From positions 15,810,001-15,874,000 of the forward strand of contig NW_025963890.1 in NCBI RefSeq assembly GCF_023055435.1: a DNA stretch of 64,000 nucleotides, in the 5' to 3' direction. Below are positions 6,078 through 59,776 of this stretch, in pieces. Made by a program: the position numbers and the translations under genes. This DNA comes from Haliotis rufescens (taxonomy: Eukaryota). The notes beneath the pieces were generated by a model. The model was not told where the DNA came from. It did no database searches and worked only from the letters and a program-made list of their open reading frames with translations. Position 1 is the first letter of the stretch. The number at the start of each line of letters is the position of its first letter.

Positions 6078-6145
6078 TATTTGTGTCTTCCAAAATTGTC
6101 TGTTAAGAGATGGACACTCGTTTGTGTGTCTTTCAAATCTATCTG

Positions 6146-37271: not shown

Positions 37272-39365
37272 CTACTTTAAAGCCATTATTTCAACTTGGC
37301 TCACAGATCGAGATCGAGAATTTTGAGATTTCTCCTCCTGAACCTCATGCACGATCTTTTCGAACAAGTCGCAGTTGTCAGCATCTATATACTTCTTGAG
37401 TCTTAGAAAAGCGTTCAGATAGCCATTGGTGGCAGTGGTGACGTTGTCGAGCCTGGCGACAATCACACGGCCGCGACGCTGTTTGACCATGATATTGTAG
37501 GTCTCCGTGAACTCGAACATCTTGGAGGGATTGTCCACATAGCTACTAGACAGCACAATGACAGCTGCGCGGCTTCTCTGGAGCGTCTTGATAACTTCAT
37601 CAGTGATCACTGTCCCCGGGTCCATGTCCCGGAGCGGGAAGTACAGTCTGAGGTTGTGATTCTGCTCCAGTTCATTAAGCAGTTTCTTGGACCAGACTCG
37701 GTCAGACTCACTCTCTCCATCCACCGACACAAACAAATCGTACTCCGAGTCCTCATCGCTAGTTCGCTTCAGCTTTTTTGCACCCGTATGAAGAAGGTGC
37801 ATCAATTCATACCGAAACACCACAACAAGGGCCACCAAAAGCACAAATATGACTGCAAATGTTCCCAACAGGGCGCTGAATATCTTAGGAAAAGGACTGC
37901 GAATCTGACAGTTAAGTAACCTTTGGTCCGCTCGTACAAGCTGTACCGTATTGCCCGCTGGCATCAAGCAAGTGATGTCGGTGACGTTGTAGTTCCGAGG
38001 TTGGTATCTGAGCCACAGTGACATCCACGTGGAGGAACAGCTGCACACAAATGGGTTTCTGTTGATGTCTAGTTTAGAATAATGGATGTTCTGGATTTTT
38101 TTCGGTAAAAACTCAAGACGATTGTCCGATAGGCCCAGAAATGCAACCCCATTTTGCAAAAGGTCAATTGCTGAAGGTGCAATAATTTTAATATTATTTC
38201 TAGATACGTCAAGATATTTTGTTCTTTGCAAATAACCTACTGCTTCCAAGAAGGTAATGGAATTATCGCCAAAAAGCAGTTTTAAATTACCGTCGGGAAC
38301 CATGGACGGTAAACGTGTCAAGTTTCTACCACGGCAGTCAACCAACATCTGTTTTTTTGCTGGCTGATCCTGACATAAACATTCTTGAGGACATTTGTCC
38401 GTGACATTACACACAAACGCATCCAGTGGCAGACGTAGCACTTGCTTTCCTTTCAGATGAGCTGGACTGTCGCAGAGAATATTTAAGTAGTTCCTCCATA
38501 TTACCGTATATAAATTCGATGACAGGTGGAGAAATTCATGAAAATTGCAATCACAGATCCACTTATTATATCTGAAGTCAAACCCCCAATTATTAAATGT
38601 CCCACCAATTTTCCGATCACGAATTCCATAGATCTCCAATTCCTCTAAAACCCATGTCGTAAACAAATTGTGAGAAAAGCCTACCATACCGGGTCCATAG
38701 TGTTTGGATTCATCCACTAACCAGTTTTCTTCGTTTGAAAAATGGGATATGTTATTGTGACTAAGGCCGAAAACACAGAATTCATGGGTAATCCTTATCG
38801 GCCAGGCCTCAGACGCTGTCAGCTCGTTGTAGTCAAGATGAACCCTCATCAATCCATGTAAGTCTTCACTGAACACTCCTGGCTCAATAGTATGTATTTT
38901 GTTATAAGCAAGGTTGATGTATCTCAACCTTTCCAAACCAACGAACACACCCGTCTCAACAGATTTAACTTCCTGGTTGACAAGTACCAGAGCTATCAAA
39001 TTCTTCAGACAGCTAAGGCTGGGAATTGTTTCGATTTTACCGGTCACCGCACGTATGCTTGCAATGTTGGGATAATCACATATATCCTCAGGGAGACGTG
39101 TGATGCACAGGTTTGAGAAGAAGAGTCGGAATGGGGATGTTTTGTTGGTGCCGGGTGGTAGGAGAAGGGTGACGTTGTCAGGCTGACTGCAGTCGTAATT
39201 CAAGATGAGGTTCGGCAATCTGTCCTCTGTCATGTTAGTGCAACACATCATGTCATCTACAGAACACTGAAGGACGTCCTCCACGGTGACACTGGTTCCG
39301 ACAGACACACTGATCAAGACAATCGCGATGAGGAAAACCAAACGTAGTGACAGAGAAAACAGCAT
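37272..39365 (-). CDS. Toll-like receptor copy 5, 697 aa
   Basis: Intact ORF with a 1-codon insertion (DDMMCC) and a TAA>TTA stop change adding C-terminal LK. Confidence 0.95.
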   Translation of the reverse strand: MLFSLSLRLVFLIAIVLISVSVGTSVTVEDVLQCSVDDMMCCTNMTEDRLPNLILNYDCSQPDNVTLLLPPGTNKTSPFRLFFSNLCITRLPEDICDYPNIASIRAVTGKIETIPSLSCLKNLIALVLVNQEVKSVETGVFVGLERLRYINLAYNKIHTIEPGVFSEDLHGLMRVHLDYNELTASEAWPIRITHEFCVFGLSHNNISHFSNEENWLVDESKHYGPGMVGFSHNLFTTWVLEELEIYGIRDRKIGGTFNNWGFDFRYNKWICDCNFHEFLHLSSNLYTVIWRNYLNILCDSPAHLKGKQVLRLPLDAFVCNVTDKCPQECLCQDQPAKKQMLVDCRGRNLTRLPSMVPDGNLKLLFGDNSITFLEAVGYLQRTKYLDVSRNNIKIIAPSAIDLLQNGVAFLGLSDNRLEFLPKKIQNIHYSKLDINRNPFVCSCSSTWMSLWLRYQPRNYNVTDITCLMPAGNTVQLVRADQRLLNCQIRSPFPKIFSALLGTFAVIFVLLVALVVVFRYELMHLLHTGAKKLKRTSDEDSEYDLFVSVDGESESDRVWSKKLLNELEQNHNLRLYFPLRDMDPGTVITDEVIKTLQRSRAAVIVLSSSYVDNPSKMFEFTETYNIMVKQRRGRVIVARLDNVTTATNGYLNAFLRLKKYIDADNCDLFEKIVHEVQEEKSQNSRSRSVSQVEIMALK

Positions 39366-39915
39366 TATTTGTGTCTTCCAAAATTGTCTGTTAAGAGATG
39401 GACACTCGTTTGTGTGTCTTTCAAATCTATCTGCTGAAAGACGAACACGAGTTTCTTTCAAACCTGTGTCGTCTGCTCGAAGATACTGACATTGATCAAG
39501 GCCAACTCGACTCCAATAATACTGCCGTCTGCTAAAAGTGGCGCTGAATTAACATTCGACTCACCTCGCAAGACAAACACTCTGAATCGCCCACTTCCTG
39601 ATTTTTATATTTTAACTCCACGAGTCTGTGTCAGAGCATTTCAGTGCGTATGCTCAGCGTTCATTGGCTGAGAGTAGTAATGTAGAAGTTCAAAGGTCAA
39701 AAGTCGCACCTCACTGCGCACATAAACAGGACAATATTTCCAACAGCAGTGAGGCAGTCTACGGTTGGCGTTCAGAAACGTGATCACATGCTGATTATGT
39801 CATTGTGTCACGTGTATTCTTACCAACAGCTGTTTGTGTCGCGATCGATAGCGATCGATAGTCCTGTTTATTGCATTCAGCAACAGTTCTACATACCTGT
39901 CAACTCTCACGCATC

Positions 39916-40473
39916 CCCATTTCTGGTGTCCCCCGACGTGATATTGCTGGAATATGGCTGAAAGCGGTGTCAAGTCCAACTCACTCACACACATGGGTGC
40001 AATGTGTGAAGCCCATTTCTGGTGTCCCCCGACGTGATATTGCTGGAATGTGGCTGAAAGCGGTGTCAAGTCCAACTCACTCACACACATGGGTGCAATG
40101 TGTGAAGCCCATTTCTGGTGTCCCCCGACGTGATATTGCTGGAATATATCTGAAAGCGGTGTCAAGTCCAACTCACTCACACACATGGGTGCAATGTGTG
40201 AAGCCCATTTCTGGTGTCCCCCGACGTGATATTGCTGGAATATATCTGAAAGCGGTGTCAAGTCCAACTCACTCACACACATGGGTGCAATGTGTGAAGC
40301 CCATTTCTGGTGTCCCCCGACGTGATATTGCTGGAATATGGCTGAAAGCGGTGTCAAGTCCAACTCACTCACACACATGGGTGCAATGTGTGAAGCCCAT
40401 TTCTGGTGTCCCCCGACGTGATAATGCTGGAATATTGCTGAAAGCGGTGTCAAGTCCAAGTCACTCACACACA
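39916..40473 (+). repeat. 96-bp tandem repeat (~6 units) derived from the 3' half of SINE family C
   Basis: Unit starts 39916, 40012, 40108, 40204, 40300, 40396. The unit matches the SINE body and tail at 46390-46482. Confidence 0.92.
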
Positions 40474-40532
40474 CTCCTTAGGAGGCATTGACTGAATGTT
40501 GTTGTGCCACTTCCATGTAACCAGGGTATATA

Positions 40533-40760: not shown

Positions 40761-42043
40761 TATATAAGATGATAAACTCCCTGCTGAAACTCAACCTAAA
40801 CCTCGTTGTTTGTCATCAACTAAAAAGGATGGAGGTTATATCATAAAAATAATAACACAAATAATATCATAAGACGGGGATCTACAGCAAAAGAATATAT
40901 TTCTGCAGCCTTAATCAAATTATTTGTGCATTTGATTTTTCTTTTACTGACATCAGATTACAAAGGGAAATTCCATTTTAACTAAAATTTAACACTTGTG
41001 TTAAAAGAATAGTTAAAAACTATTAATATTAACAGCTCTTACACGCATAACGCCAGTGAAAATCCCCAATATTACTTTTAGATTTCAAGTTTTAAGGGCA
41101 GTACCTTATTAGACAGCTTTATGTGACTTTACAACTACTTTTTACAGTCATAGGTTTTGGTACAGTAGGTAATTTAGTAACACATTTTGTACAGCACCCT
41201 GTCAATGATAAAATAGGTACCAAAATAAAATCAAAAGTTTTAGGTTGGTTGGTTGGTTGATTAACGCCGCACACAGCAATATTCCAAGCTATATGACGGC
41301 GGTCTGTAAATAATCAAGTCTGGACCAGACAATACAGTGATAAATATCAAGAGCATCGATCCACGCAATTGGGACAAAAGTTTTAGGAAAAAGATTAAGA
41401 AAAAGAACATTTGCGGAAAGTGTAAATGTGTAGGAAAAAACATACGAGAAAGTTAAATATATACCATTTGATACAACGTGTGAATCAGATCAAGCCTTCT
41501 GTGAAATCAGAACATATCCCATCAAGAATCCTTCGCGAGTTTACATTGGACCAGTCTTAGGCGCCTCGGGCCACTGTGCAGAGTTGCGTCCCTTAGGCAT
41601 GCCAGCATCCTATGACCGTGGGTTTGAATGCTGGATTCGCCCTAATTATATTTCTAGGTTTGTCAGCGTGGACAAAACAACATAACCCTGTTTGGAATCC
41701 TAAATCCATTCCAGAATAAGGTGGGTTGACCCTAATCGAACACTTGTTTATATGGGGCACCAGCGTGTCTTCCCAGATGTGGCAGCTGCTTATGAACTAC
41801 ATGTTTGATCACCATGCCTTAGTCCAGAACATCGCCATAAACTAGCAGACCAAATGAGCAAATGAAAACACAACCAAAATTTGTAACAAATAACGTGTTT
41901 TATTACCAAAAAGAAAACAATAAAACAAATAAAGGTAAAATTTATGTATTTCCCAAATATTGTAACAAATGCCTCAACAGTCTTAAAATGATTCATAAAT
42001 GTTTTGTATATAAGTATATACATATGTGTTCAGAGTTCACTGC

Positions 42044-43813
42044 CTAATCATCCTTCTTCTTAAACACACTCTTGACTCTTCTGAAGAAGTTGGCCACCCT
42101 GGATAGCAAGGCCTTCAGGAAGGAGTGGGTTGGCTGGATGATCTCCTCGTCCACGAGATCTACTTCAACAAAGTCAGTGTCGTCCACGATGTACTGACCA
42201 GCGATAGTGAGGGACACAGAAGGGACAGTGCTGGGGCGAAGGGTCTGTGGGACGGGCAGGTGAGACAAGTGGGCAGGGATGGTCAGGGACTTTGAAGTAG
42301 GTTGCTATAGATAGGGAGGTAGTGGAAAGAATGGAATGTGAGGAAAGAATATTACTAGAAAAAGTTATTCAATCTTTGAATTTTATTGTAGCAAATAAAA
42401 CATCATGGTGGTAAAGACAGAAAAGGTGTGAAAAAAGAAACAAGGTAAATAAAGATGATATATATTATATAGTAAAAACTGAAAGGTAGATGATGCCAAG
42501 GGAAGGTAGATTGTTTGTTTGCTTGCTGTTTGATGCCTCACTCAGCAATATTCCAGCTATATAATGGCGGTCTGTAAATAATCGAGTCGACCAGACAATT
42601 CAGTGATTGACATCATGAGCATTGATCGTAAAGATGATGACATGAAGGATATTCTTGGAAATACAAATGTGACAAACTTTACAGAATTACTGAAGTCTTT
42701 GAACCAAAGTACTCTCAACATTCATAATAGGACTTTATTAATTGCAAACTGTTGGTTTCTAAGGTAGGAAAACAGTATAAACATTCAGTTACAGCTTTAT
42801 GAAAACAGGGACCAGTACACAGAGGTGTTCAACATATCGGTCGAAACTCATGGAAGTGCTAAACAGGCGTTGTTAAAGACAACCCTTTATGACACCTACA
42901 TGGCAAGGGGCAGGATAAGTCAGTTGGGACAGAGGCTCGAGGAACCAGATCATCCGATCAACTGTGGGGAAATAGAAGAATAAACATACAGGGTATTAAA
43001 AGCCAAGAATGTATGTTGCTGGACCCTAACCTTTGGCTGGTGACTAGTAAATAATATATCATTTTGCAGTTTATAAATTATTTGTGCTGACAGATAGGTG
43101 GTATATCGCTAAGCTTTTAGGGGTTCCCCTTTTCCAAAATGTTCCAGTTTTATGTTGGATAAAGGGTTATGGTAATAACCAAGGGCAGCTGGCCTAGACA
43201 CTGCAAAGTATATCTCCCTGTTACTTTATAACTTGAAAACTTCAGACAAAATATGGGATAATAAGTTACAGTTTACCTTTCACTGCTAAACTAATTCTAT
43301 TTGATAAAATACAAGGGATTCAGCCTAACCATACAATATTGATTTGAGCTCAGACTGCTGTGTCAGTTGAGAGTTTATAAGAAATCATGGGCAGATCCAG
43401 GTTTATAAAAAAGGGATGGGGGGCAGGGGTGTGTTCCACTCAAGTACGGGCACTTCTCACCCAAAACACTTCCCCAAGACTCACAAACACTTCATGTAAA
43501 CCACTGATAATAAATTAACGGAATTCATTTTACAACCAAATCAACATGTTACCATGGTAGGAAAGGCGCATAAAGAATGTCAATGAGATGTAAAAAAACC
43601 CAGAGAACCCACATTTTCAAATAATGTTTACAAGTTCAAAGTACACATGGGCCCTGCATTGAACATCTAAGCCCCTAAAGCATGCAGTGTTTGAAGATCA
43701 GTACAGGAGCCATGATACACTATGCCTCATCACACTAAAATACCAACGTGTAGGTACGGAATCTACTGAAGCGTAATTAGAATTGTACCTTGAACATACG
43801 TGCTCGCATTCAT
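42044..43813 (-). CDS. Uncharacterised 115-aa protein, three coding exons, copy A
   Basis: Exons 43813-43789 (gtcaccATG...CAAG|gtacaa), 42961-42900 (ttccccacag|...|gtaggt) and 42304-42044 (polypyrimidine-tag|...TAG) join in frame (phases 1, 0). AATAAA at 41899-41904. Confidence 0.8.
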
Positions 43814-44340
43814 GGTGACAGGTTCAGGAATTGCAATAAAGGATAGGAAAATAACGCTTTCAGGACAGCAAAGTGCAGATGTAGCATCAAAATGGCGTCG
43901 ATGTAACATCAAAGTGAGAACTGTCGTCAAGGAAGACATGAAGTCTCGTAAAATCACGCGATATTACAAAATAAAGTTAACCTGGCTCCCGACTTCATTT
44001 GCGCTTGCACTGGGGTGTAAGAGACGGAGCTCGGCTGTATTTACAGGAGAGAAGTTAAGTCGCGCCATCATATAAATGGAGCAAAATTAATTATGAGCTG
44101 AATTAATTCCTTCAGTCACGATTCTGGGTGTTACTAGTTACTATTCAACCGGCAGCTTATAAGGGTCCGTCAAATTTAAGGTACGACAGTGACTATAATC
44201 ATACTGTGACTATTTTCACAACCAGCAATATGAAGGGTGCTAGGGATTTATTCTGACCGGGACCTCACGGGGACTGGTATATCGAGATGACAGGTACCAT
44301 CAGCCGACCCTGCATGGTTGGTACACTAGTTTCAGGTCAT

Positions 44341-44505
44341 GAGTGAGTGAGTATGGTTTTACACCACTTTTAGCAATATTCCAGCAATATCACGGCGGGG
44401 GACAACAGAAATGGGCTTCACACATTGTGCCAATGTTGGGTATCGACCCCGGGTCTTCAACGTGACGAGCCAACGCTTTAACCACTAGGCTACCCGACCG
44501 CCCCC
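44341..44505 (-). mobile_element. tRNA-derived SINE family C with (ACTC)n tail
   Basis: A box TAGCCTAGTGG, B-box-like GGGTCGATACCC, body TGTGTGAAGCCCATTTCTG. Other copies ~46324-46482 (+), 51074-51238 (-), 53034-53190 (+), 57426-57588 (-), 59144-59312 (-). Confidence 0.85.
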
Positions 44506-44783
44506 TCAGGTAACGATCAGGTCATGACCAGGGGCATGTTCAACAATACTTGTCTAATGGAGTACACTGACTTGCTTGAACAGGATTGACATGACCTTAC
44601 CCGAACAAAGCTCTTAAAACATTAAGTAGAAGACAGCTTTCATATTAGCTTATTCCATTAAAGAAAAGATATTACATGGGAAAAAATATCATGATATGAA
44701 TATTTCAGTTTAAGAAATATAAATTAATGTTGAAGCTTCGTTAAAAATTCAAAACTGGTAATCAATGATCGATAAGTAATTAG

Positions 44784-45920
44784 AACAAGAGGCCCATAGG
44801 GCCTGTATCGCTCTCCTGGATATTGACGCAATCATGACAAAATATACATTTGCATTGTACATGTATATAATACTCCAAATACTTCGTAATTTTGATTCTG
44901 TCAGCATTCAATATGGGTGGATGGCAAATCTGACAGCATGAACGTGTATTTATCTAGATACAAATGTGGCATAAAGATCTGAACCGTTTCCATGTTATGA
45001 TCCAGGATAAATCATATTAAAAGTATTATTCTCTTCATAACAAACAAATGTATACAATGTATCTGTTTATTATAGGGTGGGGATAATATCGGGTTGCAAG
45101 TTAAGGTCAAGATTCTAACTCCTTTGGGAGTGCCGGACAGATGAACTGAAGGGCCAGTCCTTGTAGCATATGTGCATTCCTCTCATTATACTCTCAATTG
45201 TACATATGGTATACGGTGGGGATCTTAACTGTGTCCAAGTTATAAACTCTTTTTAGCCCCGGCCCTTAGTTTCCGGGGGTAGGGGTAGGGTTAAGCCCCT
45301 CCATTTCTCCAATTTGAATCCCCACCATTGGAGAATGCTTCCATCCAAATATGGTTGATAACTATCTCTTAGTTCCAGAGAGGAAGTGGTCTGAAGCAAT
45401 ATAGCCAATATTTCGCCCCACCCCTCAGCCTCTTGGGGGGTGATCAGCCCTTCCTTTTGTACAATTTTGAATTCTCACCACCCGAGAATGCTTCCAACAA
45501 TATATGGTTGATATCTATCTCTCAGTTCAAGAGAAGAAGTCGTTGAAAACAATAACGCCTATTTGACCACGCCCATAAGCCACTTAGGGGGTGATCAGCC
45601 CCTCCATTTGTACAATTTTGAATTCTCACCTGCCGAGAATGCTTCCAAACCAACTATGGTTGATATCTATCTCTTAGTTCCAGAGAAGAAGTCGTTTAAA
45701 GCAATAAAGCCAAATTACCCCTATTTAGCCCCGCCCCTCAGCAGTTTTGGGGGGTCGGCCCAACCATTTGTACAATTTTGAATACCCACCACCTAGGGAT
45801 GCTTCCAGTCTAATTTTGTTAATTTCCAACAAGTGGTTTAGAAGAAGTCGTTTGAATAAATTGTTGACGAATGATATGATAGACGGACGACGGACGCCAC
45901 GGTATGGTATAAGCTCACCT
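44784..45920 (+). mobile_element. Non-autonomous Helentron-associated (HINE/pearl-like) element with internal tandem subrepeats
   Basis: 5' AACAAGAGGCCCATAGGGCCTGTATCGCTCTCCT with a short palindrome; ~4 internal repeats of ~150-170 bp; (GACG)n microsatellite; subterminal GCTCACCT. Matches the layout of molluscan HINEs as I recall it. Confidence 0.6.
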
Positions 45921-47157
45921 TGGTCGGGTTGTCGACTGGTCGGCTCGGAGTAAGTAAAACCGTGTCTGAATGGGGTGTCAATGTTAAACTGCGGCATGTT
46001 ATCTCAGTGGACTAGCACTGTAAAACCGGCTAGTTCAAGCAGCCACGCACGCACGCACACACGTGCATGAACGTCGCCGTATGCTCGACGTTAAACCCAT
46101 TTCACCTCATCTCACCTTACCTCGCCAAGGTGATATCCATGTTGAAATGTATGGATGAAATATGATAGGCGTTGCATCATAACCGTTTAGCCGAGTCCTT
46201 GCATCTATACCAATCAATGTCATGATGTTATGACAAAATGTTGCCAAGCCTCCAAATATTATTGTCCACACTGAAACATGAACCCAGCCAGACCGCCAGA
46301 GATGGATACTCTCCTTCTCAACAGGGGGCGGTGGGTAGCCTATTGGGTTAAAGGGTTAGCTCACGCCGAAGACCAAGGTTCAATTGCCTACATGAGTACA
46401 TGTGTGAAGCGCAATTCTGGTGTCCCCCGCACTGATATTCGTGGAATATTGCTGAAAACGGCGTAACACCGTACTCACTCATTCGTTTTAAATTCATTTT
46501 AAATGTTTGATTTGTATCCTGGACCTATCAGGTGTAGCCTGGTTGTCCAAGATGAAACATATTGCAACTGTACCAAAATGTAGACCATTTACTCAACAAG
46601 AAATGTTGCAACCAGAGGATTTATTCATCTTCGTCACTCTGTTCATGGTACAGTGCGTGCGTGCGTGCGTGCGTGTAACAATTGTTTGGAACCTTGGAAA
46701 TACAATGCTGTGGGGCCATGACATTAATCCAGTGTCGGAAAGAACTCGACAAAATGATTTGTGGTACAACGTCTGCCACACTCCATGCATTAATTTCCCA
46801 TGGTGGTCAGAAGGTATGTATTGTTCGTGGTACAACTTTCTACTTAATGATTTGATTATTACCAAACATTTTGCAAGTAATATATTTCCTAAATATTGTT
46901 ACAAATGCGTCAAGAGTCCTAAAGGAGGCCTCACTAATTCATGAGTTTCACATATTTATTATCCTAAAAACACTTGTGTGAAGATTAAGTGATGTACATG
47001 TAAACTGCTCAGTATGTGAGTGGATGTGACGTTTGGAATGTTAATTTCTTTCCAGAATTAAATAGGTTAAACACCTGTTCAGATGGTGCACCTGCGTGCC
47101 GTCCCAGATGTAGCAGCTGTTTATGGACTACATGTGTAATCACCATGCGTTAGTCTA

Positions 47158-47420
47158 GAGTGAGTGAGTGAGTGAGTGAGTTGGGTTTAACGCCGCTTTA
47201 AACAGTATTCCAGTTATATCACGGCGTGTGAGCTTAATGTGGGAGGAAAGCCCGAAGTGATGCAGGTCTGAGACGTTTACCACTTCGGTGAAACCCACGA
47301 GCACAGGTATGGTGCTGACAAACCTAGAAACATAATCGGGGCGAACCGGGATTCGAACAAACAATCATAGATTTCTGGCGTGCCCAAGGGGCGCAACTCT
47401 GCGCATCGAATCGCGGCGCC
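47158..47420 (-). mobile_element. SINE family D (B box GTTCGAATCCC), sharing the 3' tail of families A and C
   Basis: Related segments at ~41560-41670, 60825-60910 and 61975-62168; (ACTC)n tail. Confidence 0.6.
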
Positions 47421-48775
47421 TTAGTAGACGACTGTGCCACCCGTGCCCTCCGGCAGTTTATATAAGATTATAAACTCCCTGCTGAAACTCAACCTAAACC
47501 TTGTCGTTTGTAATCAGCTAAAAAGGGGTGGAGGTGTTATCATAAAAATAATAACACAAATAAAATCATAAGACGGGGATTTACAGCAAAAGAATATATT
47601 TCTGCAGCCTTAAACAAATTATTTGTGCATTTGATTTTTCTTTTACTGACATCAGATTACCAAATGAAATTCTATTTTAACTACATATTAACACTTGTGT
47701 TAAAGAATAATAAAAAACTTAGATATTTATATCTTGGCAAATAATTTTAATATTAACTGCTCTATAACTTACTAGCGTAACGCCAGTGAAAAGGCACAAT
47801 ATTACTTTTAGATTTCAAGTTTTAAGGGCAGAACCTTATTAGACAGCTTTATGTGACTTTACAAATACTTTTTACAGCCATAGGTTTTGGTACAGTAGGT
47901 AATTTAGGCACACATTTTATACAGCACCCTGTCAATGATAAAATAAGTACCAAAATAAAATCAAAAGTGTTAGTTTGGTTAGTTGGTTGGTTTGTTGTTT
48001 CACGCCGCACTCAGCAATATTCCAAGCTATATGACGGCGATCTGTAAATAATCAAGTCTGGACCAGACAATACAGTGATTAATATCATGAGCATCGATCC
48101 ACGCAATTGGGACAAAAGTTTTAGGAAGAAGATAAAGAACTTTTGCGGAAAGTGTAAATGTGTAGAAAAAACATATGAGAAAGTTAAATATATACCATTT
48201 GATACAACGTGTGAATCAGATCAAGCCTTCTGTGAAATCAGAACATATCCCATCAAGAATCCTTAGCGAGTTTACATTGGACCAGTCTTAGGCGCCTCAG
48301 GTCACTGTGCAGAGTTGTATCCCTTAGGCATGCCAGCATCCTATGACCGTGGGTTTGAATGCTGGATTCGCCCTAATTATATTTCTAGGTTTGTCAGCGT
48401 GGACAAAACAACACAACCCTGTTTGGAATCCTAATTCCATTCCAGAATAAGGTGGGTTGACCCTAATCGAACACTTGTTTATATGGGGCACCAGCGTGTC
48501 TTCCCAGATGTGGCAGCTGCTTATGAACTACATGTTTGATCACCATGCCTTAGTCCAGAACATCGCCATAAACTAGCAGACCAAATGAGCAAATGAAAAC
48601 ACAACCATAATTTGTAACAAATAACGTGTTTTATTACCAAAAAGAAAACAATAAAACAAATAAAGGTAAAATTTATGTATTTCCCAAATATTGTAACAAA
48701 TGCCTCAATAGTCCCAAAAATGATTCATAAATGTTTTGTATATAAGTATATACATATGTGTTCAGAGTTCACTGC

Positions 48776-50546
48776 CTAATCATCCTTCTTCTTAAACACA
48801 CTCTTGACTCTTCTGAAGAAGTTGGCCACCCTGGATAGCAAGGCCTTCAGGAAGGAGTGGGTTGGCTGGATGATCTCCTCATCCACGAGATCTACTTCAA
48901 CAAAGTCAGTGTCGTCCACGATGTACTGACCAGCGATAGTGAGGGACACAGAAGGGACAGTGCTGGGGCGAAGGGTCTGTGGGACGGGCAGGTAGGACAA
49001 GTGGGCAGGGATGGTCAGGGACTTTGAAGTAGGTTGCTATAGATAGGGAGGTAGTGGAAAGAATGGGGTGTGAGGAAAGAATATTACTAGAAAAAGTTAT
49101 TCAATCTTTGAATTTTATTGTAGCAAATAAAACATCGTGGTGGTAAAGACAGAAAAGGTGTGAAAAAAGAAACAAGGTAAATAAAGATGATATATATTAT
49201 ATAGTAAATACTGAAAGGTAGATGATGCCAAGGGAAGGTAGATTGTTTGTTTGTTTGCTTGCTGTTTGATGCCTCACTCAGCAATATTCCAGCTATATAA
49301 TGGCGGTCTGTAAATAATCGAGTCGACCAGACAATTCAGTGATTGACATCATGAGCATTGATCGTAAAGATGATGACATGAAGGATATTCTTGGAAATAC
49401 AAATGTGACAAACTTTACAGAATTACCGAAGTCTCTGAACCAAAGTACTCTAAACATTCATAATAGGACTTTATAAATTGCATACTGTTGGTTTCTAAGG
49501 TAGGAAAACAGTATAAACATTCAGTTACAGCTTTATGAAAACAGGGACCAGTACACAGAGGTGTTCAACATATCGGTCGAAACTCATGGAAGTGCTAAAC
49601 AGGCGTTGTTAAAGACAACCCTTTATGACACCTACATGGCAAGGGGCAGGATAAGTCAGTTGGGACAGAGGCTGGAGGAACCAGATCATCCGATCAACTG
49701 TGAGGAAACAGAAGAATAAACATACAGGGTATTAAAAGCCCAGAATGTATGTTGCTGGACCCTAACCTTTGGCTGGTGACTAGTAAATAATATATCATTT
49801 TGCAGTTTATAAATCATTTGTGCTGACAGATAGGTGGTATATCGCTAAGCTTTTAGGGGTTCCCCTTTTCCAAAATGTTCCAGTTTTATGTTGGATAAAG
49901 GGTAATGGTAATAACCAAGGGCAGCTGGCCTAGACACTGCAAAGTATATCTCCCTGTTACTTTATAACTTGAAAACTTCAGACAAAATATGGGATAATAA
50001 GTTACAGTTTACCTTTAACTGCTAAACTAATTCTATTTGATAAAATACAAGGGATTCAGCCTAACCATACAATATTGATTTGAGCTCAGACTGCTGTGTC
50101 AGTTAAGAGTTTATAAGAAATCATGGGCAGATCCAGGTTTATAAAAATGGGATGGGGGGCAGGGGTGTGTTCCGCTCAAGTACGGGCACTTCTCACCCAA
50201 AACACTTCCCCAAGACTCACAAACACTTCATGTAAACCACTGATAATAAATTAACGGAATTCATTTTACAACCAAATCAACATGTTACCATGGTAGGAAA
50301 GGCGCATAAAGAATGTCAATGAGATATAAAAAACCCCAGAGAACCCACATTTTCAAATAATGTTTACAAGTTCAAAGTACACATAGGCCCTGCATTGAAC
50401 ATCTAAGCCCCTAAAGCATGCAGTGTTTGAAGATCAGTACAGCCATGATACACTATGCCTCATCACACTAAAATACAAACATGTAGGTACGGAATCTACT
50501 GAAGCGTAATTAGAATTGTACCTTGAACATACGTGCTCGCATTCAT
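48776..50546 (-). CDS. Uncharacterised 115-aa protein, copy B
   Basis: Exons 50546-50522, 49697-49636 and 49036-48776; splice sites and frame intact; E>Q and H>Y relative to copy A. Confidence 0.8.
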
Positions 50547-51515
50547 GGTGACAGGTTCAGGAATTGCAATAAAGGATAGGAAAATAACGCTTTCAGAACA
50601 GCAAAGTGCAGATGTAGCATCAAAATGGCGTCGATGTAACATCAAAGTGAGAACCGTCGTCAAGGAAGACATGAAGTCTCGTAAAATCACGCGATATTAC
50701 AAAATAAAGTTAAACTGGCTCCCGACTTTATTTGCGCTTGCACTGGGGTGTAAGAGACGGAGCTCGGCTGTATTTACAGGAGAGAAGTTAAGTCGCGCCA
50801 TCATATAAATGGAGCAAAATTAATTATGAGCTGAATTAATTCCTTCAGTCACGATTCTGGGTGTTACTAGTTACTATTCAACCAGCAGCTTATAAGGGTC
50901 CGTCAAATTTAAGGTACGACAGTGACTATAATCATACTATGACTATTTTCACAACCAGCAATATGAAGGGTGCTAGGGATTTATTCTGACCGGGACCTCA
51001 CGGGGACTGGTATATCGAGATGACAGGTACCATCAGCCGACCCTGCATGGTTGGTACACTAGTTTCAGGTCATGAGTGAGTGAGTATGGTTTTACGCCAC
51101 TTTTAGCAATATTCCAGCAATATCACGGCGGGGGACAACAGAAATGGGCTTCACACATTGTGCCAATGTTGGGTATCGACCCCGGGTCTTCAACGTGACG
51201 AGCCAACGCTTTAACCACTAGGCTACCCGACCGCCCCCTCAGGTAACGATCAGGTCATGACCAGGGGCATGTTCAACAATACTTGTCTAATGGAGTACAC
51301 TGACTTGCTTGAACAGGATTGACATGACCTTACCCGAACAAAGCACTTAAAACATTAAGTAGAAGACAGCTTTCATATTAGCTTATTCCATTAAAGAAAA
51401 GATATTACATGGGAACAAATATCATGATATGAATATTTCAGTTTAAGAAATATAAATTAATGTTGAAGCTTCGTTAAAAATTCAAAACTGAAATCAATGA
51501 TCGATAAGTAATTAG

Positions 51516-52653
51516 AACAAGAGGCCCATATGGCCTGTATCGCTCTCCTGGATATTGACGCAATCATGACAAAATATACATTTGCATTGTACATGTATAT
51601 AATACTCCAAATACTTCGTAATTTGGATTCTGTCAGCATTCAATATGGGTGGATGGCAAACCTGACAGCATGAACGTGTATTTATCTAGATACAAATGTG
51701 GCATAAAGATCTGAACCGTTTCCATGTTATGATACAGGATAAATCATATTAAAAGTATTATTCTCTTCATAACAAACAAATGTATACAATGTATCTGTTT
51801 ATTATAGAGTGGGGATAATATCGGTTTGCAAGTTATGGTCAAGATTCTAACTCCTTTGGGTGTGCCGGACTGATGAACAGAAGGGCCAGTCCTTGTAGCA
51901 TATGTGCATTCCTCTCATTATACTCTCAATTGTACATATGGTTATACGGTGGGGATCTTAACTGTGTCCAAGTTATAAACTCTTTTTAGCCCCGGCCCTT
52001 AGTCCCCGGGGGTAGGGGTAGGGTTCAGCCCTCCATTTCTCCAATTTGAATCCCCACCACTGGAGAATGATTCCATCCAAATATGGTTGATAACTATCTC
52101 TTAGTACCAGAGAGGAAGTGGTCTGAAGCAATATAGCCAAATTACCCCTATTTCGCCCCGCCCCTCAGCCTCTTGGGGGGTGATCAGCCCTTCCTTTTGT
52201 ACAATTTTGAATTCTCACCACCCGAGAATGCTTCCAACAATATATGGTTGATATCTATCTCTCAGTTCAAGAGAAGAAGTCGTTGAAAACAATAACGCCA
52301 AATTACTCCTATTTGGCCACGCCCATAAGCCCCTTGGGGTGTGATCAGCCCCTCCATTTGTACAATTTTGAATTCTCACCACCGAAGAATGCTTCCAACC
52401 AAATATGGTCGATATCTAACTCTTAGTTCCAGAGAAGAAGTCGTTTAAAGCAATATAGACAATTTACCCCTATTTAGCCCCGCCCCCTCAGCCCAACCAT
52501 TTGTACAATTTTGAATACCCACCACCTAGGGATGCTTCCAGTCTAATTTTGTTAATTTCCAACAAGTGGTTTAGAAGAAGTCGTTTGAATAAATTGTTGA
52601 CGGATGATATGATAGACGGACGACGGACGCCACGGTATGGTATAAGCTCACCT
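51516..52653 (+). mobile_element. HINE-like element, duplicate copy
   Basis: Duplicate of 44784-45920 with indels in the internal repeats. Confidence 0.6.
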
Positions 52654-53983
52654 TGGTCGGGTTGTCGACTGGTCGGCTCGGAGTAAGTAAAACCGTGTCT
52701 GAATGGGGTGTCAATGTTATACTGCGGCATGTTATCTCAGTGGACTAGCACTGTAAAACCGGCTCGTTCAAGCAGCCACGCACGCACACACACACATGCA
52801 CTAACGTATGCGCGACGTTAAACCTCACCTCACCTCACCAAGGTGATATCCATGTTGAAATGTATGGATGAAATATGATAGGCGTTGCATCATAACAGTT
52901 TAGCCGAGTTCTTGCATCTATTCCAATCAATGTCATGATGTTATGACAAAATGTTGCCAAGCCTCCAAATATTATTGTCCACACTGAAACATGAACCCAG
53001 CCAGACCAGAGATGGATACTCTCCTTCTCAACAGGGGGCGGTGGGTAGCCTATTGGTTAAAGGGTTAGCTCACGCCGAAGACCAAGGTTCAATTGCCTAC
53101 ATGAGTACATGTGTGAAGCGCATTTTTGGTGTCCCCCGCACTGATATTCGTGGAATATTGCTGAAAACGGCGTAACATCATACTCACTCATTCGTTTTAA
53201 ATTCATTTTAAATGTTTGATTTGTATCCTAGGCCTACCAGGAATAGCCTTGTTGTCAAAGATGAAACATATTGCAACTGTACCAAAATGTAGACAATTTA
53301 CTCAACAAGAAATGTTACAACCAGAGGATTTATTCATCTTCGTCACTCTGTTCATGGTACAGTGCGTGCGTGCGTGCGTGTAACATTTGTTTGGAGCCTT
53401 GGAAATACAATGCTGTGGGGCCATGACATTAATCCAGTGTCGGAAAGAACTCGACAAAATGATTTGTGGTACAACGTCTGCCACACTCCATGCATTAATT
53501 TCCCATGGTGGTCAGAAGGTATGTATTGTTCGTGGTACAACTTTCTACTCCATGATTTGATTATTACCAAACATTTTGCAAGTAATATATTTCCTAAATA
53601 TTGTTACAAATGCGTCAAGAATCCTAAAGGAGGACTCACTCACATATTCATGAGTTTCACATATTTATTATCCTAAAAACACTTGTGTGAAGATTAAGTA
53701 ATGTACATGTAAACTGCTCAGTATGTGAGTGGATGTGACGTTTGGAATGTTAATTTCTCTCCAGAATTAAACACCTGTTCAGATGGTGCACCTGCGTGCA
53801 GTCCCAGATGTAGCAGCTGTTTATGGACTACATGTGTGATCACCATACGTTAGTCTAGAGTGAGTGAGTGAGTATTCCAGTTATATCACGGCGTGGGAGG
53901 AAAGCCGAAGTTTCTGGCGTGCCCAAGGGACGCAACTCTGCACATCGAATCGCGGCGCCTTAGTACACGACTGAGCCACCCGT

Positions 53984-54086
53984 ATATTGTAACAAATGCC
54001 TCAACAGTCCTAGAATGATTCATAAATGTTGTGTATGTAAGTATATACATATGTGTTCATAGTTCACTGCCTTATCATCCTTCTTC
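53984..54086 (-). pseudogene. Remnant (last codons plus part of 3' UTR) of a fourth copy of the 115-aa gene
   Basis: Matches 41957-42059 and is fused directly to downstream-flank sequence. Confidence 0.6.
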
Positions 54087-54587
54087 AAGAATCCTTAGCG
54101 GGTTTACATGGGACCAGTCTTAGGCGCCTCAGGTCACTGTGCAGAGTTGCGTCCCTTAGGCATGCCAGCAACCAAAGACCGTGTGTTTCAATGCTGGATT
54201 CGCCCTACTTATATTTCTAGGTTTGTCAGTGTGGACAAAACACCAATTCCATTCCAGAATAAGGTGGGTTGACCCTAATCGAACACTTGTTTATATGGTG
54301 CACCAGCGTGTCTTCCCAGATGTGGCAGCTGCTTATGAACTACATGTTTGATCACCATGCCTTAGTCCAGAACATCGCCATAAACTAGCAGACCAAATGA
54401 GCAAATAAAAACACAACCAAAATTTGTAACAAATAACGTGTTTTATTACCAAAAAGAAAACAATAAAACAAATAAAGGTAAAATTTATGTATTTCCCAAA
54501 TATTGTAACAAATGCCTCAAGAGTCCCAAAAATGGTTCATAAATGTTTTGTATATAAGTATATATTTTTGTGTTCAGAGTTCACTGC

Positions 54588-57031
54588 CTAATCATCCTTC
54601 TTCTTAAACACACTCTTGACTCTTCTGAAGAAGTTGGCCACCCTGGATAGCAAGGCCTTCAGGAAGGAGTGGGTTGGCTGGATGATTTCCTCATCCACGA
54701 GATCAACTTCAACAAAGTCAGTGTCGTCCACGATGTACTGACCAGCGATAGTGAGGGACACAGAGGGGACAGTGCTGGGGCGAAGGGTCTGTGGGACGGG
54801 CAGGTGAGACAAGTGGGCAGGGATGGTCAGGAACTTCGAAGTTGGGTGCTATTAGAGAGGGAGGTAGTGGAAAGAATGGGACGTGAGGAAAGAATATTAT
54901 GTTGAAGAAAAAGTTATTCAATTATTGAATTATATTGTAGCAAATATGAAATTTTGTCGGTAGAGCCAGAAAAGTGATGAAGGTATGAGTGAAAAAGTCT
55001 ATAGGTGGTTATAATTAAGAATTAAATCTGTACATGAAGTAAACAAAAATGATATTATTTTATATAGTAGATAATGAATGACGGTAAAAGGCTGATGTGA
55101 GGTACAGACAAAGGTAAAGCAGATATGACGTGAATGACCGAATGGTCTATTGCAGTATTGGAAATATGTATATTGAGAGCTGAGATTCTTTCTGTGAGAA
55201 ACCATAGACAGTGTGATCCAGGCAGAAGATTTGTATTGTTACAAGTACACATTCAATAATGAGAGGTGGAGATTACATAATCAAAAATAGACATCATGAA
55301 GGGATTTTCTAGGAAATACCAAGAATGATACCATAATGAAGTATATACCAGGCCAAGTATAATGGTAAGCAGTTAATAGTCATACATCCAGTTGGTAGAA
55401 TTTGCCTTAAACTGCTTGTTTAGGACCAGAATATATAATAATGTTTGTTGGTTTTCTTTTAGTTTGGGAAGTATGTCATATTTAGTGTAATGTTTAGGAT
55501 GTTAAATTTCAACCAGTATATTAATGTTTTCCACATGTAAGTGATACTGAAAACACAATATCATATTATATGCAGAGCTAAACACTAAGAATATACATAA
55601 TAACAGGCCCCTATACCACCTACTGGAGAAGGGGCAGGAAAAGGCAGGGGGGACAGAGGCAGGGGGAACCAGATCATCCGATCAACTGTGAGGGAATGGA
55701 AGGGTAAGACATTGAGTACAAGCCACTTCAGAGGGTAAATCGAAAAGTTTGTTGCCTCACATAGAAAATCGTTCAGAATCAAAATTATTTTTCCAATGTA
55801 TATTTCCTTTGATACACTTGGCCCAGCAATGCTTTCTCAAAGCCAGATACAATTATTTGTTTGTAGCTTGATGTGTCATAATCCAAGAGATGTTCTCCTT
55901 CATACACCTTCTGTGATACCTCCCATGTGACCAGAACATTTCGATTTACCCTCATACATATACTAACCTATGAGAACATAATGTCTATCATTGTAAAATG
56001 TTTAATTTCATTTCAAACTCAGGGATGCTTATTTAGGAGACTGGACTCATCTTTAACCCTCTGGATGTCATTTGGACATATATGTCCCTACACAAAACAC
56101 AGTTGCTGTGCCAGAGGGACATATATGTCCTTCTGAAACAACATGTTAAAAGAATTGAATAAATACAGCGATAGTACACAGGCTATTTTTAGGTGGCAGC
56201 CAGAGGGTTAAGACACATTGCAGTCCAGCTGGTCATGTGACTATGTTACCATTTCGACACAAACAGACACAGGTGAGTTCATGTAAAACGTTGGGTAGAA
56301 TGTGAGGCCGAATGCATTTTAAAAAAGTCTATCCTATGCTGTATGATTATGGACTGAGGGCACCAGTTGTTGGTAATTTCGCAATTGACCAATGGCAGAG
56401 ACGGTTGTAGGTCTAAAAGGATCTTCATCAAGTGAAGGGACAAACGACATGTGTGTCTCCCTACACGTCATTGGCAGGATTGCGGTATATACCGATACCG
56501 TATGCCATTTTTGGAACAGATTTGCACGAGCTCCTTTCTTTGCCGCTCTAACGGTTTCCAAGTTTTTCAGACGTGTTTTGGGGTCAGTTTATGGTTAACA
56601 TCAGAGAAATCGGTAGTTTCTAGTGTGGGTTGATGTATAGGCCTGCCTCCTTTATATGTAATATGTAAATATATTTATATAGACATTTAGCCTTGATACA
56701 ACAGGCTGCTAATCTCTCAAACTCACGCTCGAAATTATGGGGCTATTCCCACGTATTTTTTTCAACAAAAAATCGAAACCCTGGGGAAGAAATCACTGGG
56801 GTAGGCTCGGCCTATAGCTCTACGGTCGATGTTGGGGTCATTGTCGGCACAGGTACTGGACAACTGTACCCCAGGTATATTTACGTATACAGAAACGTAT
56901 CCAAGCTTGGCAATATTATATTAGATACTGTCACTTCACATTGTCTAATAGTAATAGGCTAATGTTACAGGATCATAAAGACATGGAAACAAAGTCAGAA
57001 TTGTACCTTGAACATACGTGCTCGCATTCAT
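54588..57031 (-). CDS. Uncharacterised 115-aa protein, copy C (diverged introns)
   Basis: Exons 57031-57007, 55685-55624 and 54848-54588 have the same lengths (25/62/261 nt) and splice sites as A and B, although the introns barely align. Confidence 0.82.
56057..56207. mobile_element. piggyBac-type MITE in intron 1 of copy C
   Basis: TTAA target duplication; TIRs CCCTCTGGATGTCA / TGGCAGCCAGAGGG; internal GGACATATATGTCC palindrome twice. Confidence 0.75.
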
Positions 57032-57425
57032 GGTGACGGGTTCAAGAAATGCAAGACAGGATAGCAAGATAACGCTTTCAGAAAAGCAAAGTGCAGATGT
57101 AACAACAACAATGGCGTCGATGTGACATCAAAGTGACAACGGTCGTCAAGGACGACATTCAAAGTAACAGTCACGCGAGATTTAAAAAGAGTGTTGACTG
57201 GTTCCTGGCTTCTTTCGCGCTTTCAATATTTTAGATCTGTAAAGACTGAGCTCAGTTTGTATATAAAAATTATGTTGCGAAAAAACGTCAAGTTCACTGT
57301 GGAAATTTATTTTAAAAATAATTTGTAGGGGGACACCAAAAACTATCTTGTTGGAATTTGTTAAGAGTTAAAAACAATATGATTTATTTTGAGGAGCACA
57401 TACAGAGTCTTCATACTTTACTCGG

Positions 57426-57588
57426 GTGAGTGAGTATGGTTTTACGCCGCTTTTAGCAATATTTCAGCAATATCCCTGCGGGGGACACCGAAAAATGGGC
57501 TTCACACATTGTATGCATGTGGGGAATCGAACCCGGGCCTTCGACGTGACGAGCCAACGCTTTAACCACTAAGCTACCCCACCGCCCC
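57426..57588 (-). mobile_element. tRNA-derived SINE family C, near full length
   Basis: GGGGCGGTGGGGTAGCTTAGTGG head, B box GGTTCGATTCC, ACTCACTCAC tail. Confidence 0.85.
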
Positions 57589-58255: not shown

Positions 58256-59776
58256 GCTATATGACGGCAGTCTGTAAAAACCTGTAAAAAGTCTGGACCA
58301 GACAATCCAGTGATCGACATCATGAACATGGATCTACGCAATTGGGATACATATAAAAAAAACCCAGGGGGAGCAATTTGGTAGTTAATAATTTGGTAAT
58401 TTACATATGTTAAAATAAGTACTACGAAGTTTGTAAAAGTTTTTTTGTATGGCAATTCAAGTGTAAAGGGTTCACTACCATGTAGAGCTGGCTACTTAAT
58501 ATATACTTTTTAATGCTGCAACGTGATTTAACTCGCGCAGTTATGTAGATACTATACTAAAAAACCTCATCCAGCTTTACTTGGTAGAACCCTTCGCCAA
58601 TGGACCCTTTGGTTGCGTGGTTAGAGTTACGTCCCTTGGATTTTTAACAGCAGGAAAGTCGGTCGTCGGCTATTTCGCCAAGCCTTGATAATAGACTGCA
58701 TGCTTGCTCCGTCTGTTGGCAAGTTGAACGACACAAACGTTTCGAGGTAAGAAGTCTTTTCCCGGGAACTATAAAATATGTATTCTCGACACTGTAAGAC
58801 GAACTTGTGTAATGAAATGGTATGGCTAGTGCTGCACTCATACTTTTGTAACGGTCTAGTCTTACAGTAGATCTAACGGCGTTATAATAGACTTACGTCT
58901 ACTAATTTAAGGGATTTCCTTAGTGTTCATTCAAAGCCGTGAGAAGATCCAGTGCGCGAGGCAGGCTTTTGTCTTGACTGTTGGACCCCATCACCTCATG
59001 AAGGTGAAATATTGGTTACTCAGACGAAGACATGCAGGTGTTGTTTTAGGTGATTCACTGATTGAAGCACAGGACCATGTGACTAGGCCTAATATTCAAT
59101 ACTAACATAGCTCTAGAATATATGTACATGGTCCTGTAATTGAAGTGAGTAAGTGAGTATGGTTTTATGCCGCTATTAGCAATATTCCAGCAATATCACA
59201 GCGAGGGACACCACAAACAGACAAATGGGCTTCACACATTGTACCCATGTCGGGAATCGAACCCGGGTCGAATGCTTTAACAGGTTACCCTTTGATCACA
59301 AGGCTACCCGGGCCCTTAATTGGAGTTAGGTTATTGTCTATAGATATTGTAATAAGTGATACCTTTTTAACATTGACATAGGAATTAACATAGGAATTTA
59401 AGTTGTAAAAGTTTTTTTATGGTAATTCAAGTGTAAACTGAGCTCAACTTACCAGCGTACGTTTTACATAGATTGTCATCCTTGCTCAGGAAACACCATA
59501 TCTGTGCTTATCGGTTTTACCAAAGTGGTAATTGTTTCATTAGGGAGGTGGCAGCAGAACGTGTTACACTAATGCCCAATCCCATTGTCTTTTTAGACAA
59601 AAAAATATGTTTAAATTAAACTATCCTCCCACATTAAGGCTGACAAACTGGGACACGATAGAAATACTTCTTAAAACAATGTTAGACTAACTCACTTTCC
59701 ATACTTATGGGATAATTTATTTTCAGTTTACAAGAATGGAAGAAAGAGGTTGAGGGGAGAAGTCTCGGATGTCATC

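What the first reader, a model, noticed from the sequence alone, without database searches (positions are those of the whole stretch)
42044..57031. Hidden triplicated three-exon gene encoding a 115-aa orphan protein beside the TLR array
Seen: three ORF-track fragments that look unrelated are exons of one gene. Copy A splices to MNASTYVQV-DRMIWFLEPLSQLTYPAPCH-QPTSKSLTIPAHLSHLPVPQTLRPSTVPSVSLTIAGQYIVDDTDFVEVDLVDEEIIQPTHSFLKALLSRVANFFRRVKSVFKKKDD. All three copies keep a Kozak-like accATG, exon sizes 25/62/261, GT-AG sites, phases and an AATAAA. In copy C the exons are conserved islands in largely unalignable introns. Over the last 80 codons, A and C differ at 4 sites, all synonymous. I recognise no family. 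Inference: a real, lineage-restricted, amplified small-protein gene in an immune locus.
Basis: partly seen in the sequence, partly recalled or inferred. Interest (0 to 1): 0.9.

Follow-up and report, generated by a model that had tools for sequence, protein, structure and literature searches.

The report
Abalone-only small protein gene family
Three neighbouring copies of a small three-exon gene are real members of a large gene family found only in abalones. The family is already predicted in public annotations but has never been studied, its protein is mostly disordered with one membrane-seeking helix, and its position beside immune-receptor genes looks accidental.

Summary
Three minus-strand copies (A, B, C) each have exons of 25/62/261 nt, GT-AG introns, A at -3 of the ATG, and an AATAAA 140 nt after the stop. 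Each encodes 115 aa.

It is neither an orphan nor merely triplicated. The genome is Haliotis rufescens. RefSeq already carries 95-118-aa 'uncharacterized protein' models of this family in four Haliotis species, one of them a single residue different from copy A. The exact A, B and C proteins were not among the cluster members read, so these three copies may be unannotated.

The genome holds at least 57 open exon-3 copies on 14 contigs. They fall into four or five deeply diverged subfamilies. The four mapped here, including the window's, share the three-exon plan.

A profile search of 1.84 billion proteins found only Haliotis, plus two anonymous short contigs. Pfam, PDB and the ESM Atlas gave nothing.

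The protein is predicted disordered except for a C-terminal cationic amphipathic helix. An acidic motif, F-[VI]-[ED]-[VI]-x-L, sits just before the helix. Selection on exon 3 is purifying.

Only this one of about 20 family sites lies beside TLR genes. I obtained no RNA evidence. Function is inferred: a membrane-associated adaptor, with a membrane-active peptide precursor as the rival.

The parts
43789..43813 (-). Copy A exon 1 (ATG plus 8 codons and 1 nt; donor GT)
   Evidence: 100% identical in B and C
42900..42961 (-). Copy A exon 2 (62 nt; AG acceptor, GT donor)
42044..42304 (-). Copy A exon 3 (86 codons plus TAG). Encodes a Pro-rich linker, the acidic F-V-E-V-D-L motif and the C-terminal amphipathic helix
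41899..41904 (-). Copy A AATAAA, 140 nt after the stop
43814..44009 (-). Copy A 5' UTR / putative promoter, 83% conserved with copy C (57032-57225)
50522..50546 (-). Copy B exon 1
49636..49697 (-). Copy B exon 2 (E17Q relative to A)
48776..49036 (-). Copy B exon 3 (H44Y relative to A)
48630..48635 (-). Copy B AATAAA
57007..57031 (-). Copy C exon 1
55624..55685 (-). Copy C exon 2 (Pro-rich variant; 9 non-synonymous and 2 synonymous changes relative to A)
54588..54848 (-). Copy C exon 3
54442..54447 (-). Copy C AATAAA
54085..54974 (-). Block homogenised between A (41522-42425) and C. It spans the end of intron 2, exon 3 and 520 nt of 3' flank at 86-97% identity
53984..54086 (-). Orphan fragment: a second copy of the last 16 coding nt plus 87 nt of 3' UTR, directly downstream of copy C's block. 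A remnant of unequal exchange
   Evidence: 94% to 41957-42059
42507..42627 (.). Dispersed repeat inside intron 2 of copy A (also in B). Not part of the gene
   Evidence: many copies in the window; word depth >100,000

Best explanation
WHAT IT IS (shown). Copies A, B and C are three tandem paralogues of a protein-coding, three-exon gene family that exists only in abalones (Haliotis).

- The window is from the H. rufescens assembly.
- The family has at least 57 open exon-3 copies here, mostly in tandem arrays with a 6-7 kb period, and four or five deeply diverged subfamilies.
- RefSeq already models many members as 'uncharacterized protein' of 95-118 aa.
- Copies evolve in concert: species-specific substitutions in exon 3 are shared between paralogue types, and a 900-bp block is homogenised between A and C. 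The protein is nonetheless under purifying selection.

WHAT THE PROTEIN LOOKS LIKE (shown by prediction and alignment).
- No signal peptide or transmembrane segment.
- Disordered and Pro-rich over the first ~88 residues.
- A short conserved N-terminal motif, M-x-S-x-Y-V-Q.
- A conserved hydrophobic-acidic motif, F-[VI]-[ED]-[VI]-x-L, in an acidic tract. F74 and L79 are invariant.
- About 10 residues further on, one 24-residue cationic amphipathic helix (hydrophobic moment 0.70, charge +6) with invariant S90, S97, R98 and R105.
- Net charge of the whole protein is about 0.

HOW IT MOST LIKELY WORKS (inferred, about 35%). It is a cytosolic, peripherally membrane-bound adaptor. The C-terminal helix lies on an acidic membrane surface, and the acidic F-x-x-[VI] motif recruits a partner. 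The motif has the form of an Atg8-interacting (LIR/AIM) motif. In the free state the acidic tract may mask the helix.

The neighbouring TLR array is a coincidence of tandem-duplication-prone DNA, not a functional unit.
For: Gene model: exon sizes, phases, GT-AG and AATAAA are the same in all three copies.

Independent models: 11 cluster representatives from H. cracherodii, H. rubra, H. rufescens and H. asinina, E down to 4e-46, with the same spliced N-terminus. P0012 (H. rufescens LOC124138760 / LOC124146547) differs from copy A only at residue 17.

Genome identity: the lengths of contigs C135 and C490 equal those carrying H. rufescens LOC models, and paralogue-specific substitutions match.

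Family size: 57 exon-3 matches, none with an internal stop.

Conserved exon plan in the three other subfamilies mapped (the C490, C135 and C66/C312 types), besides the window's own: RefSeq proteins map as exon 1 ending ...Q plus 1 nt, exon 2 of about 20 codons, and exon 3 of 77-86 codons. Exon 2 has AG/GT in 19 of the 20 close copies.

Selection: dN/dS is 0.17-0.57 for deep pairs. There are 0 non-synonymous changes where 8.4 are expected in the last 80 codons of A versus C. Whole-gene identity to the 17.5-Mb array is 84-90%, against 97-99% for exon 3.

Restriction: the profile search found only Haliotis, plus two anonymous ENA contigs.

Structure: AlphaFold2 with the family alignment gives one helix, residues 90-113 (pLDDT about 83 at its start), and the rest has no secondary structure. 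The hydrophobic moment is 0.70 against 0.40 for shuffles.

No TE domains in the spacer ORFs.

TLR genes are adjacent at this site only.
Against: No transcript or protein evidence was obtained. The runs laid were short contigs covering exons and introns alike, and no splice joint appeared among those listed. Whether the RefSeq models have RNA support could not be checked.

The mechanism rests on motif form and a predicted helix only. F-x-x-[VI] motifs in acidic disordered regions are common and often not functional. The exon-3 similarity is partly due to gene conversion. Recent paralogue pairs show noisy dN/dS, up to 1.5.
Confidence: 0.6

Rival explanations
1. Precursor of a membrane-active (antimicrobial or cytolytic) peptide. 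The cationic amphipathic C-terminal helix is the active part. The acidic tract neutralises it until proteolysis releases it. In the main and the C66/C57 subfamilies the motif reads V-E-V-D or V-E-I-D, the form of a caspase site, directly upstream. Tandem amplification and concerted evolution would then be those of an immune effector family.
For: The helix has charge +6, hydrophobic moment 0.70 and about half hydrophobic residues. Net charge of the whole protein is 0 to -1 in four of the six members measured (-3 and -5 in the two anonymous ENA contigs). The family is large, lineage-restricted and tandemly arrayed. This is analogous to multigenic linear cationic peptide families of mussels (myticalins, PMC5577615, listed; known to me, not read here).
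Against: No signal peptide: the N-terminus carries D and R and is Pro-rich in every subfamily. There is no dibasic processing site before the helix. The Asp at the would-be P1 position is not conserved in the C13, C490 and C135 subfamilies. No activity data exist.
Confidence: 0.18
2. A functional partner of the neighbouring TLR genes (for example a regulator or sorting adaptor), kept beside them by selection.
For: Copies lie on both sides of the TLR array (L016 at C112:15792510, and A, B, C after it), on the same strand as the TLRs.
Against: About 20 other family sites on 14 contigs have no TLR of this kind nearby. The only other contig with both (C13) has them 2.9 Mb apart. There is no TIR, death or other signalling domain. 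The TLR repeat units contain no remnant of the small gene, only a shared dispersed repeat.
Confidence: 0.05
3. Not a functional protein gene: a repeated ORF carried along by segmental or satellite-like amplification or by a mobile element, modelled by annotation pipelines but not translated or not needed.
For: High copy number. Truncated and fragmentary copies exist: L021 cut by a repeat insertion, L038 short, fragments beside L029 and L040, and 53984-54086 in the window. No RNA evidence here. No homologue outside one genus.
Against: Splice sites, phases and the stop position are kept across subfamilies whose synonymous sites are saturated (dS about 1) with dN/dS 0.26-0.57. All 57 exon-3 matches are open. 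Introns diverge freely while exons do not. No transposase or RT domain in the spacers. The family is conserved between Haliotis species as distant as H. asinina and H. rufescens.
Confidence: 0.1

Closest known systems
RefSeq 'uncharacterized protein' models of Haliotis (e.g. H. rufescens LOC124138760, LOC124138761, LOC124138764, LOC125382021; H. cracherodii XP_071119556)
   Same: Same family and same three-exon model. 97-99% identity to copies A and B. The copy-C exon-2 variant is present in H. cracherodii (P0002).
   Different: The exact A, B and C proteins are not among the cluster members read, so these three loci seem unmodelled. None of the models has a name, domain or publication.
LIR/AIM-bearing selective-autophagy adaptors with a membrane-binding helix (LIR core [WFY]-x-x-[LIV] in an acidic context; established knowledge)
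   Same: An invariant F and [VI] at +3. Acidic residues before and after the core. Disordered context. An amphipathic helix close by.
   Different: No sequence homology to any such adaptor. Binding to Atg8 is not shown. The extra invariant L at +5 is not part of the LIR definition.
Multigenic linear cationic peptide precursors of molluscs (myticalins of Mytilus, PMC5577615)
   Same: Lineage-restricted. Many tandem paralogues. A cationic segment paired with an anionic segment.
   Different: Those have a signal peptide, a processing site and the anionic part after the peptide. Here there is no signal peptide and the order is reversed.
FITZAP / sp6 of abalone sperm (PMC6952181)
   Same: An abalone-specific, small, disordered, charged protein.
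   Different: FITZAP has two exons, a signal peptide, an N-terminal poly-Asp run and is about 6 kDa. Our family has three exons, no signal peptide and a cationic helix. No relation.

Membership tests
Haliotis RefSeq uncharacterized 95-118-aa family | Significant sequence similarity over exon 3 | tested here: met
   E 4e-46 to 7e-25, 72-97% identity, 92-100% coverage
Haliotis RefSeq uncharacterized 95-118-aa family | Same spliced N-terminus / three-exon plan | tested here: met
   The in-script translation of A differs from P0012 at one residue. The exon plan also holds in the diverged subfamilies.
Haliotis RefSeq uncharacterized 95-118-aa family | Conserved F-x-x-x-x-L motif and S/R-striped C-terminal helix | tested here: met
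   Invariant F74, L79, S90, S97, R98, R105 in 25 sequences
LIR/AIM Atg8-interacting proteins | Core [WFY]-x-x-[LIV] with acidic neighbours in a disordered region | tested here: met
   F-[VI]-[ED]-[VI] in all subfamilies, flanked by D/E. No predicted secondary structure outside the helix.
LIR/AIM Atg8-interacting proteins | Physical binding to Atg8/GABARAP through the motif | not testable with these tools
   Needs a pull-down or ITC with motif mutants. See Tried and rejected.
Secreted linear cationic antimicrobial peptide precursors | N-terminal signal peptide | tested here: not met
   By inspection, no uninterrupted hydrophobic core. D, R, Q and P interrupt the N-terminus in every subfamily. 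No signal-peptide predictor was available.
Secreted linear cationic antimicrobial peptide precursors | Cationic amphipathic helix | tested here: met
   Hydrophobic moment 0.57-0.79, charge +3 to +6. Helix 90-113.
Secreted linear cationic antimicrobial peptide precursors | Dibasic or other defined processing site next to the peptide | tested here: not met
   The residues before the helix are Q-P-T-H-S or P-P-Q-S.
FITZAP / sp6 | Two exons, signal peptide, N-terminal poly-Asp | tested here: not met
   Description in PMC6952181 compared
BH3-only proteins | L-x-x-x-[GAS]-D in an amphipathic helix | tested here: not met
   The position of the invariant Asp is N, R, G or K in the subfamilies.
Transposable-element-borne ORF | TE protein domains or terminal repeats bounding each copy | tested here: not met
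   No Pfam domain in 7 spacer ORFs. Copies are in head-to-tail arrays with diverged introns. Terminal repeats were not searched for systematically.

The most novel reading that the evidence does not exclude
A genus-specific, massively amplified family of switchable membrane effectors. The acidic F-V-E-[VI]-D motif would act as an Atg8-docking site or a caspase cleavage site (V-E-V-D / V-E-I-D). It would control the release of a cationic amphipathic helix onto membranes. That would be a new kind of small innate-immunity or cell-death effector that arose de novo within abalones.
Probability: 0.1. Interest if true: 0.7.

Novelty: new member of a known kind. Interest (0 to 1): 0.38.

Why it matters
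The family is one of the larger taxonomically restricted gene families in a commercially and ecologically important mollusc. It has at least 57 loci in red abalone and dozens of models in black abalone, and nothing is known about it.

It is a clean case for studying how a young, disordered, motif-plus-helix protein is born, amplified in tandem arrays and homogenised by gene conversion.

If the motif and helix prove functional, in membrane recruitment, autophagy or a membrane-active peptide, it would add an abalone-specific layer to stress or immune biology. That would bear on disease work in abalone aquaculture and conservation.

For annotation, the window seems to hold three intact members (plus a fourth just outside it) that are missing from the protein sets.

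Tried and rejected
1. Read laying on 41400-44400 with four runs from four studies. All were short assembled contigs that also cover the introns, for example pieces spanning 42077-42333 and 42874-43099. The joints listed were all between dispersed repeats. Higher depth on exons could be pile-up from about 20 paralogues. This is no evidence for or against splicing.

Neighbours and DNA of the orthologues in other Haliotis species could not be fetched, and the origin of the anonymous ENA contigs (P0030, P0033) stays unknown.

3. Complex prediction of a GABARAP-like protein (P0174, species not identified, 95% identical to the abalone middle exon) with exon-3 residues 27-61 returned no verdict: score 0.17 against a mark of 0.34, controls not run. 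This is not evidence either way.

4. ESM Atlas, twice: no usable hit. Pfam at E up to 10: only sub-threshold noise. PDB profile search: best E 0.18, a transferrin receptor, noise.

5. Jellyfish (Rhopilema esculentum) giant repeat proteins P0031 and P0032 reached E 7e-15 and 4e-7. They did so only by summing 7-16 repeats of about 3 bits each. Not accepted as homologues.

6. FITZAP/sp6 rejected. A BH3 motif and a KKXX tail were rejected as not conserved across subfamilies.

7. Literature search for six LOC identifiers: no paper.

Searches used exon 3 by reference or database proteins. Joined translations were made only inside scripts, for counting.

9. Fold search was not run, because the model is low-confidence outside the helix.


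Full report
**The observation.**
Reading the minus strand of 42000-44000 and locating the equivalents by BLAST gave three copies with identical architecture.

- Each has a 25-nt exon 1 beginning 'cacc-ATG', a GT donor, a 62-nt exon 2 between AG and GT, and a 261-nt exon 3 after AG ending in TAG.
- Introns are 827/595 nt (A), 824/599 nt (B) and 1321/775 nt (C).
- An AATAAA lies 140-141 nt after the stop in all three.
- A and B are 98.2% identical across 3 kb including introns. They count as one observation.

**A versus C.**
Copy C is informative.

- Exon 1 is 100% and exon 2 is 82% identical to A, inside introns that do not align (about 50%).
- Exon 3 is not an isolated island. The last 120 nt of intron 2 (86%), exon 3 (96.9%) and the 3' flank out to +520 (95.3-95.6%) form one homogenised block. 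It extends far beyond the poly(A) signal and then ends abruptly (39%).
- H. cracherodii models P0001 and P0002 carry the two exon-2 types. They share that species' own exon-3 substitutions.
- So exon 3 and its flank evolve in concert between paralogue types.
- Against the flank's 4.6% divergence, about 8.4 non-synonymous differences are expected in the last 80 codons and none is seen (P = 2e-4). Purifying selection is still indicated.
- Exon 2 behaves differently: 9 non-synonymous and 2 synonymous changes.

**It is a known predicted family, in red abalone.**
Exon 3, searched by reference, found 11 cluster representatives. All are NCBI 'uncharacterized protein' models of 95-118 aa from H. cracherodii, H. 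rubra, H. rufescens and H. asinina. They have the same N-terminus across both splice junctions.

- Cluster listings name H. rufescens LOC124138760, LOC124138761, LOC124138763, LOC124138764, LOC124146547, LOC125382034, LOC125382035 and others.
- P0012 differs from copy A only by E17Q, and from copy B only by H44Y.
- The lengths of contigs C135 and C490 of the window's genome equal those of the contigs carrying H. rufescens models. Paralogue-specific substitutions match individual models.
- The genome is therefore the H. rufescens assembly.
- The exact proteins of A, B and C (and the C-type in H. rufescens) are not among the members of the two relevant 90% clusters. These loci are probably unmodelled.

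**Family size and structure.**
Searching the whole genome with exon 3 gave 57 matches, none with an internal stop.

- About 20 are 82-100% identical to A. They lie at three C112 sites, including a seven-copy array at 17.48-17.54 Mb, and on C223, C390, C323 and C612.
- A fourth local copy, L016, lies at C112:15792510, on the other side of the TLR array. It is C-type and 92% identical to copy C over 2 kb.
- The rest are 40-59% identical and sit in their own tandem arrays with a period of about 7 kb, on C13, C57, C66, C312, C135 and C490.
- Mapping RefSeq proteins of three further subfamilies (the C490, C135 and C66/C312 types) onto these loci shows the same plan as in the window's subfamily. Exon 1 encodes M-x-S-x-Y/C-V/T-Q plus one base. 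Exon 2 has about 20 codons. Exon 3 has 77-86 codons with the stop at the same place.
- Exon 2 has AG/GT in 19 of the 20 close copies.
- For deep pairs dS is saturated (about 1) and dN/dS is 0.26-0.57. For intermediate pairs it is 0.17-0.54. Very recent pairs are noisy.
- Whole-gene identity of A to the 17.5-Mb array is 84-90%, against 97-99% for exon 3.
- Together with the cross-species models, this makes a real coding family very likely (about 0.85).

**Restriction.**
A profile of 25 members (A1) was scored against 1.84 billion representatives. It found eight proteins:

- Haliotis subfamily representatives;
- two anonymous ENA ORFs on contigs of 503 and 846 bp;
- two giant jellyfish repeat proteins, whose score is a sum of about 3 bits per repeat, which I do not accept as homologues.

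Pfam, PDB sequences and the ESM Atlas gave nothing. No paper mentions the LOC identifiers.

**The protein.**
- AlphaFold2 with the alignment predicts no structure except a helix at residues 90-113. pLDDT is 83 at its start and the overall mean is 59.
- The helix has a hydrophobic moment of 0.70, against 0.40 for shuffles, and charge +6. All subfamilies have the same kind of helix.
- Invariant columns are F74 and L79, in F-[VI]-[ED]-[VI]-x-L within an acidic tract, and S90, S97, R98 and R105, roughly one stripe of the helix.
- The whole protein is about neutral.
- The N-terminus is not a signal peptide by inspection.

**Mechanism.**
My preferred reading is a cytosolic, peripherally membrane-bound adaptor. 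Its acidic F-x-x-[VI] motif has the form of an Atg8-interacting motif and would recruit a partner. I put this at about 35%.

The main rival is a masked membrane-active peptide precursor, at about 18%. In two subfamilies it might be released at a caspase-like V-E-[VI]-D site. Neither reading was tested successfully here.

**Context.**
- The five-to-seven-copy TLR array (LRR plus TIR) occupies C112:15806477-15849461.
- Of about 20 family sites, only this one is next to TLR genes. On C13 the two families are 2.9 Mb apart.
- The spacers between A, B and C hold no recognisable gene or TE domain.
- I therefore regard the immune neighbourhood as incidental.

**Expression.**
- No run on record as RNA held the stretch.
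- The four runs laid were short contigs that also cover introns and show no listed splice joint.
- Expression therefore remains untested here.

**Verdict.**
- The gene is real and lineage-restricted.
- It belongs to an already predicted, large, uncharacterised abalone family. It is not a hidden orphan tied to immunity.
- It is of moderate interest as a young, amplified, concertedly evolving motif-plus-helix protein family.

Noticed in passing
window 297-1375, 7809-8900 and equivalents in each TLR repeat unit: A 41-nt tandem satellite of about 25 units recurs once per ~7.5-8 kb TLR unit. There are 104 register-shifted matches in the window.
   Followed up: no
window 39800-40491: A 96-nt tandem repeat, open in both strands (224- and 206-aa pseudo-ORFs). 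It is built from the same sequence as the dispersed element at 44340-44436.
   Followed up: partly
window 57519-57577 (-), and 44340-44500, 46329-46484, 53039-53193, 59146-59310: A tRNA-like match (Rfam RF00005, 30.8 bits) inside a highly repeated element lying about 500 nt upstream of each small-gene copy. Probably a tRNA-derived SINE. Word depth in public runs exceeds 500,000.
   Followed up: partly
window 4009-6173 (= C112:15814006-15816173): One TLR copy is split into two frames with stops. The other copies are 98% identical to the 729-aa copy at 37272-39461.
   Followed up: partly
window 59750-60949 (+): A BTB plus BACK domain ORF of 399 aa, on the opposite strand, just beyond copy C.
   Followed up: no
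L021 (G000:C556:18573406-18573579): A family member whose helix-coding end is replaced by the dispersed repeat also found in intron 2 of copies A and B. A pseudogene created by insertion.
   Followed up: no
L040:1016-1181, L029:255-383, L030:266-399: Frameshifted or degenerate second exon-3 fragments about 1 kb downstream of intact genes in the C490 and C66/C312 arrays. Debris of unequal exchange, like 53984-54086 in the window.
   Followed up: no
P0031, P0032, P0061 (Rhopilema esculentum LOC135694323 and an anonymous ENA protein): Giant jellyfish proteins made of ~189-aa repeats. Each repeat has an acidic 'S-T-D-F-x-F-E-D-L' stretch and, about 80 residues later, a cationic helix-like stretch resembling the abalone module. 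Per-repeat scores are insignificant. Convergence or chance is likelier than homology.
   Followed up: partly
G000:C112:15792510-15792764 (L016): A fourth intact local copy (C-type) lies on the far side of the TLR array, 17.5 kb before the window start. The TLR array therefore sits inside a small-gene cluster.
   Followed up: partly
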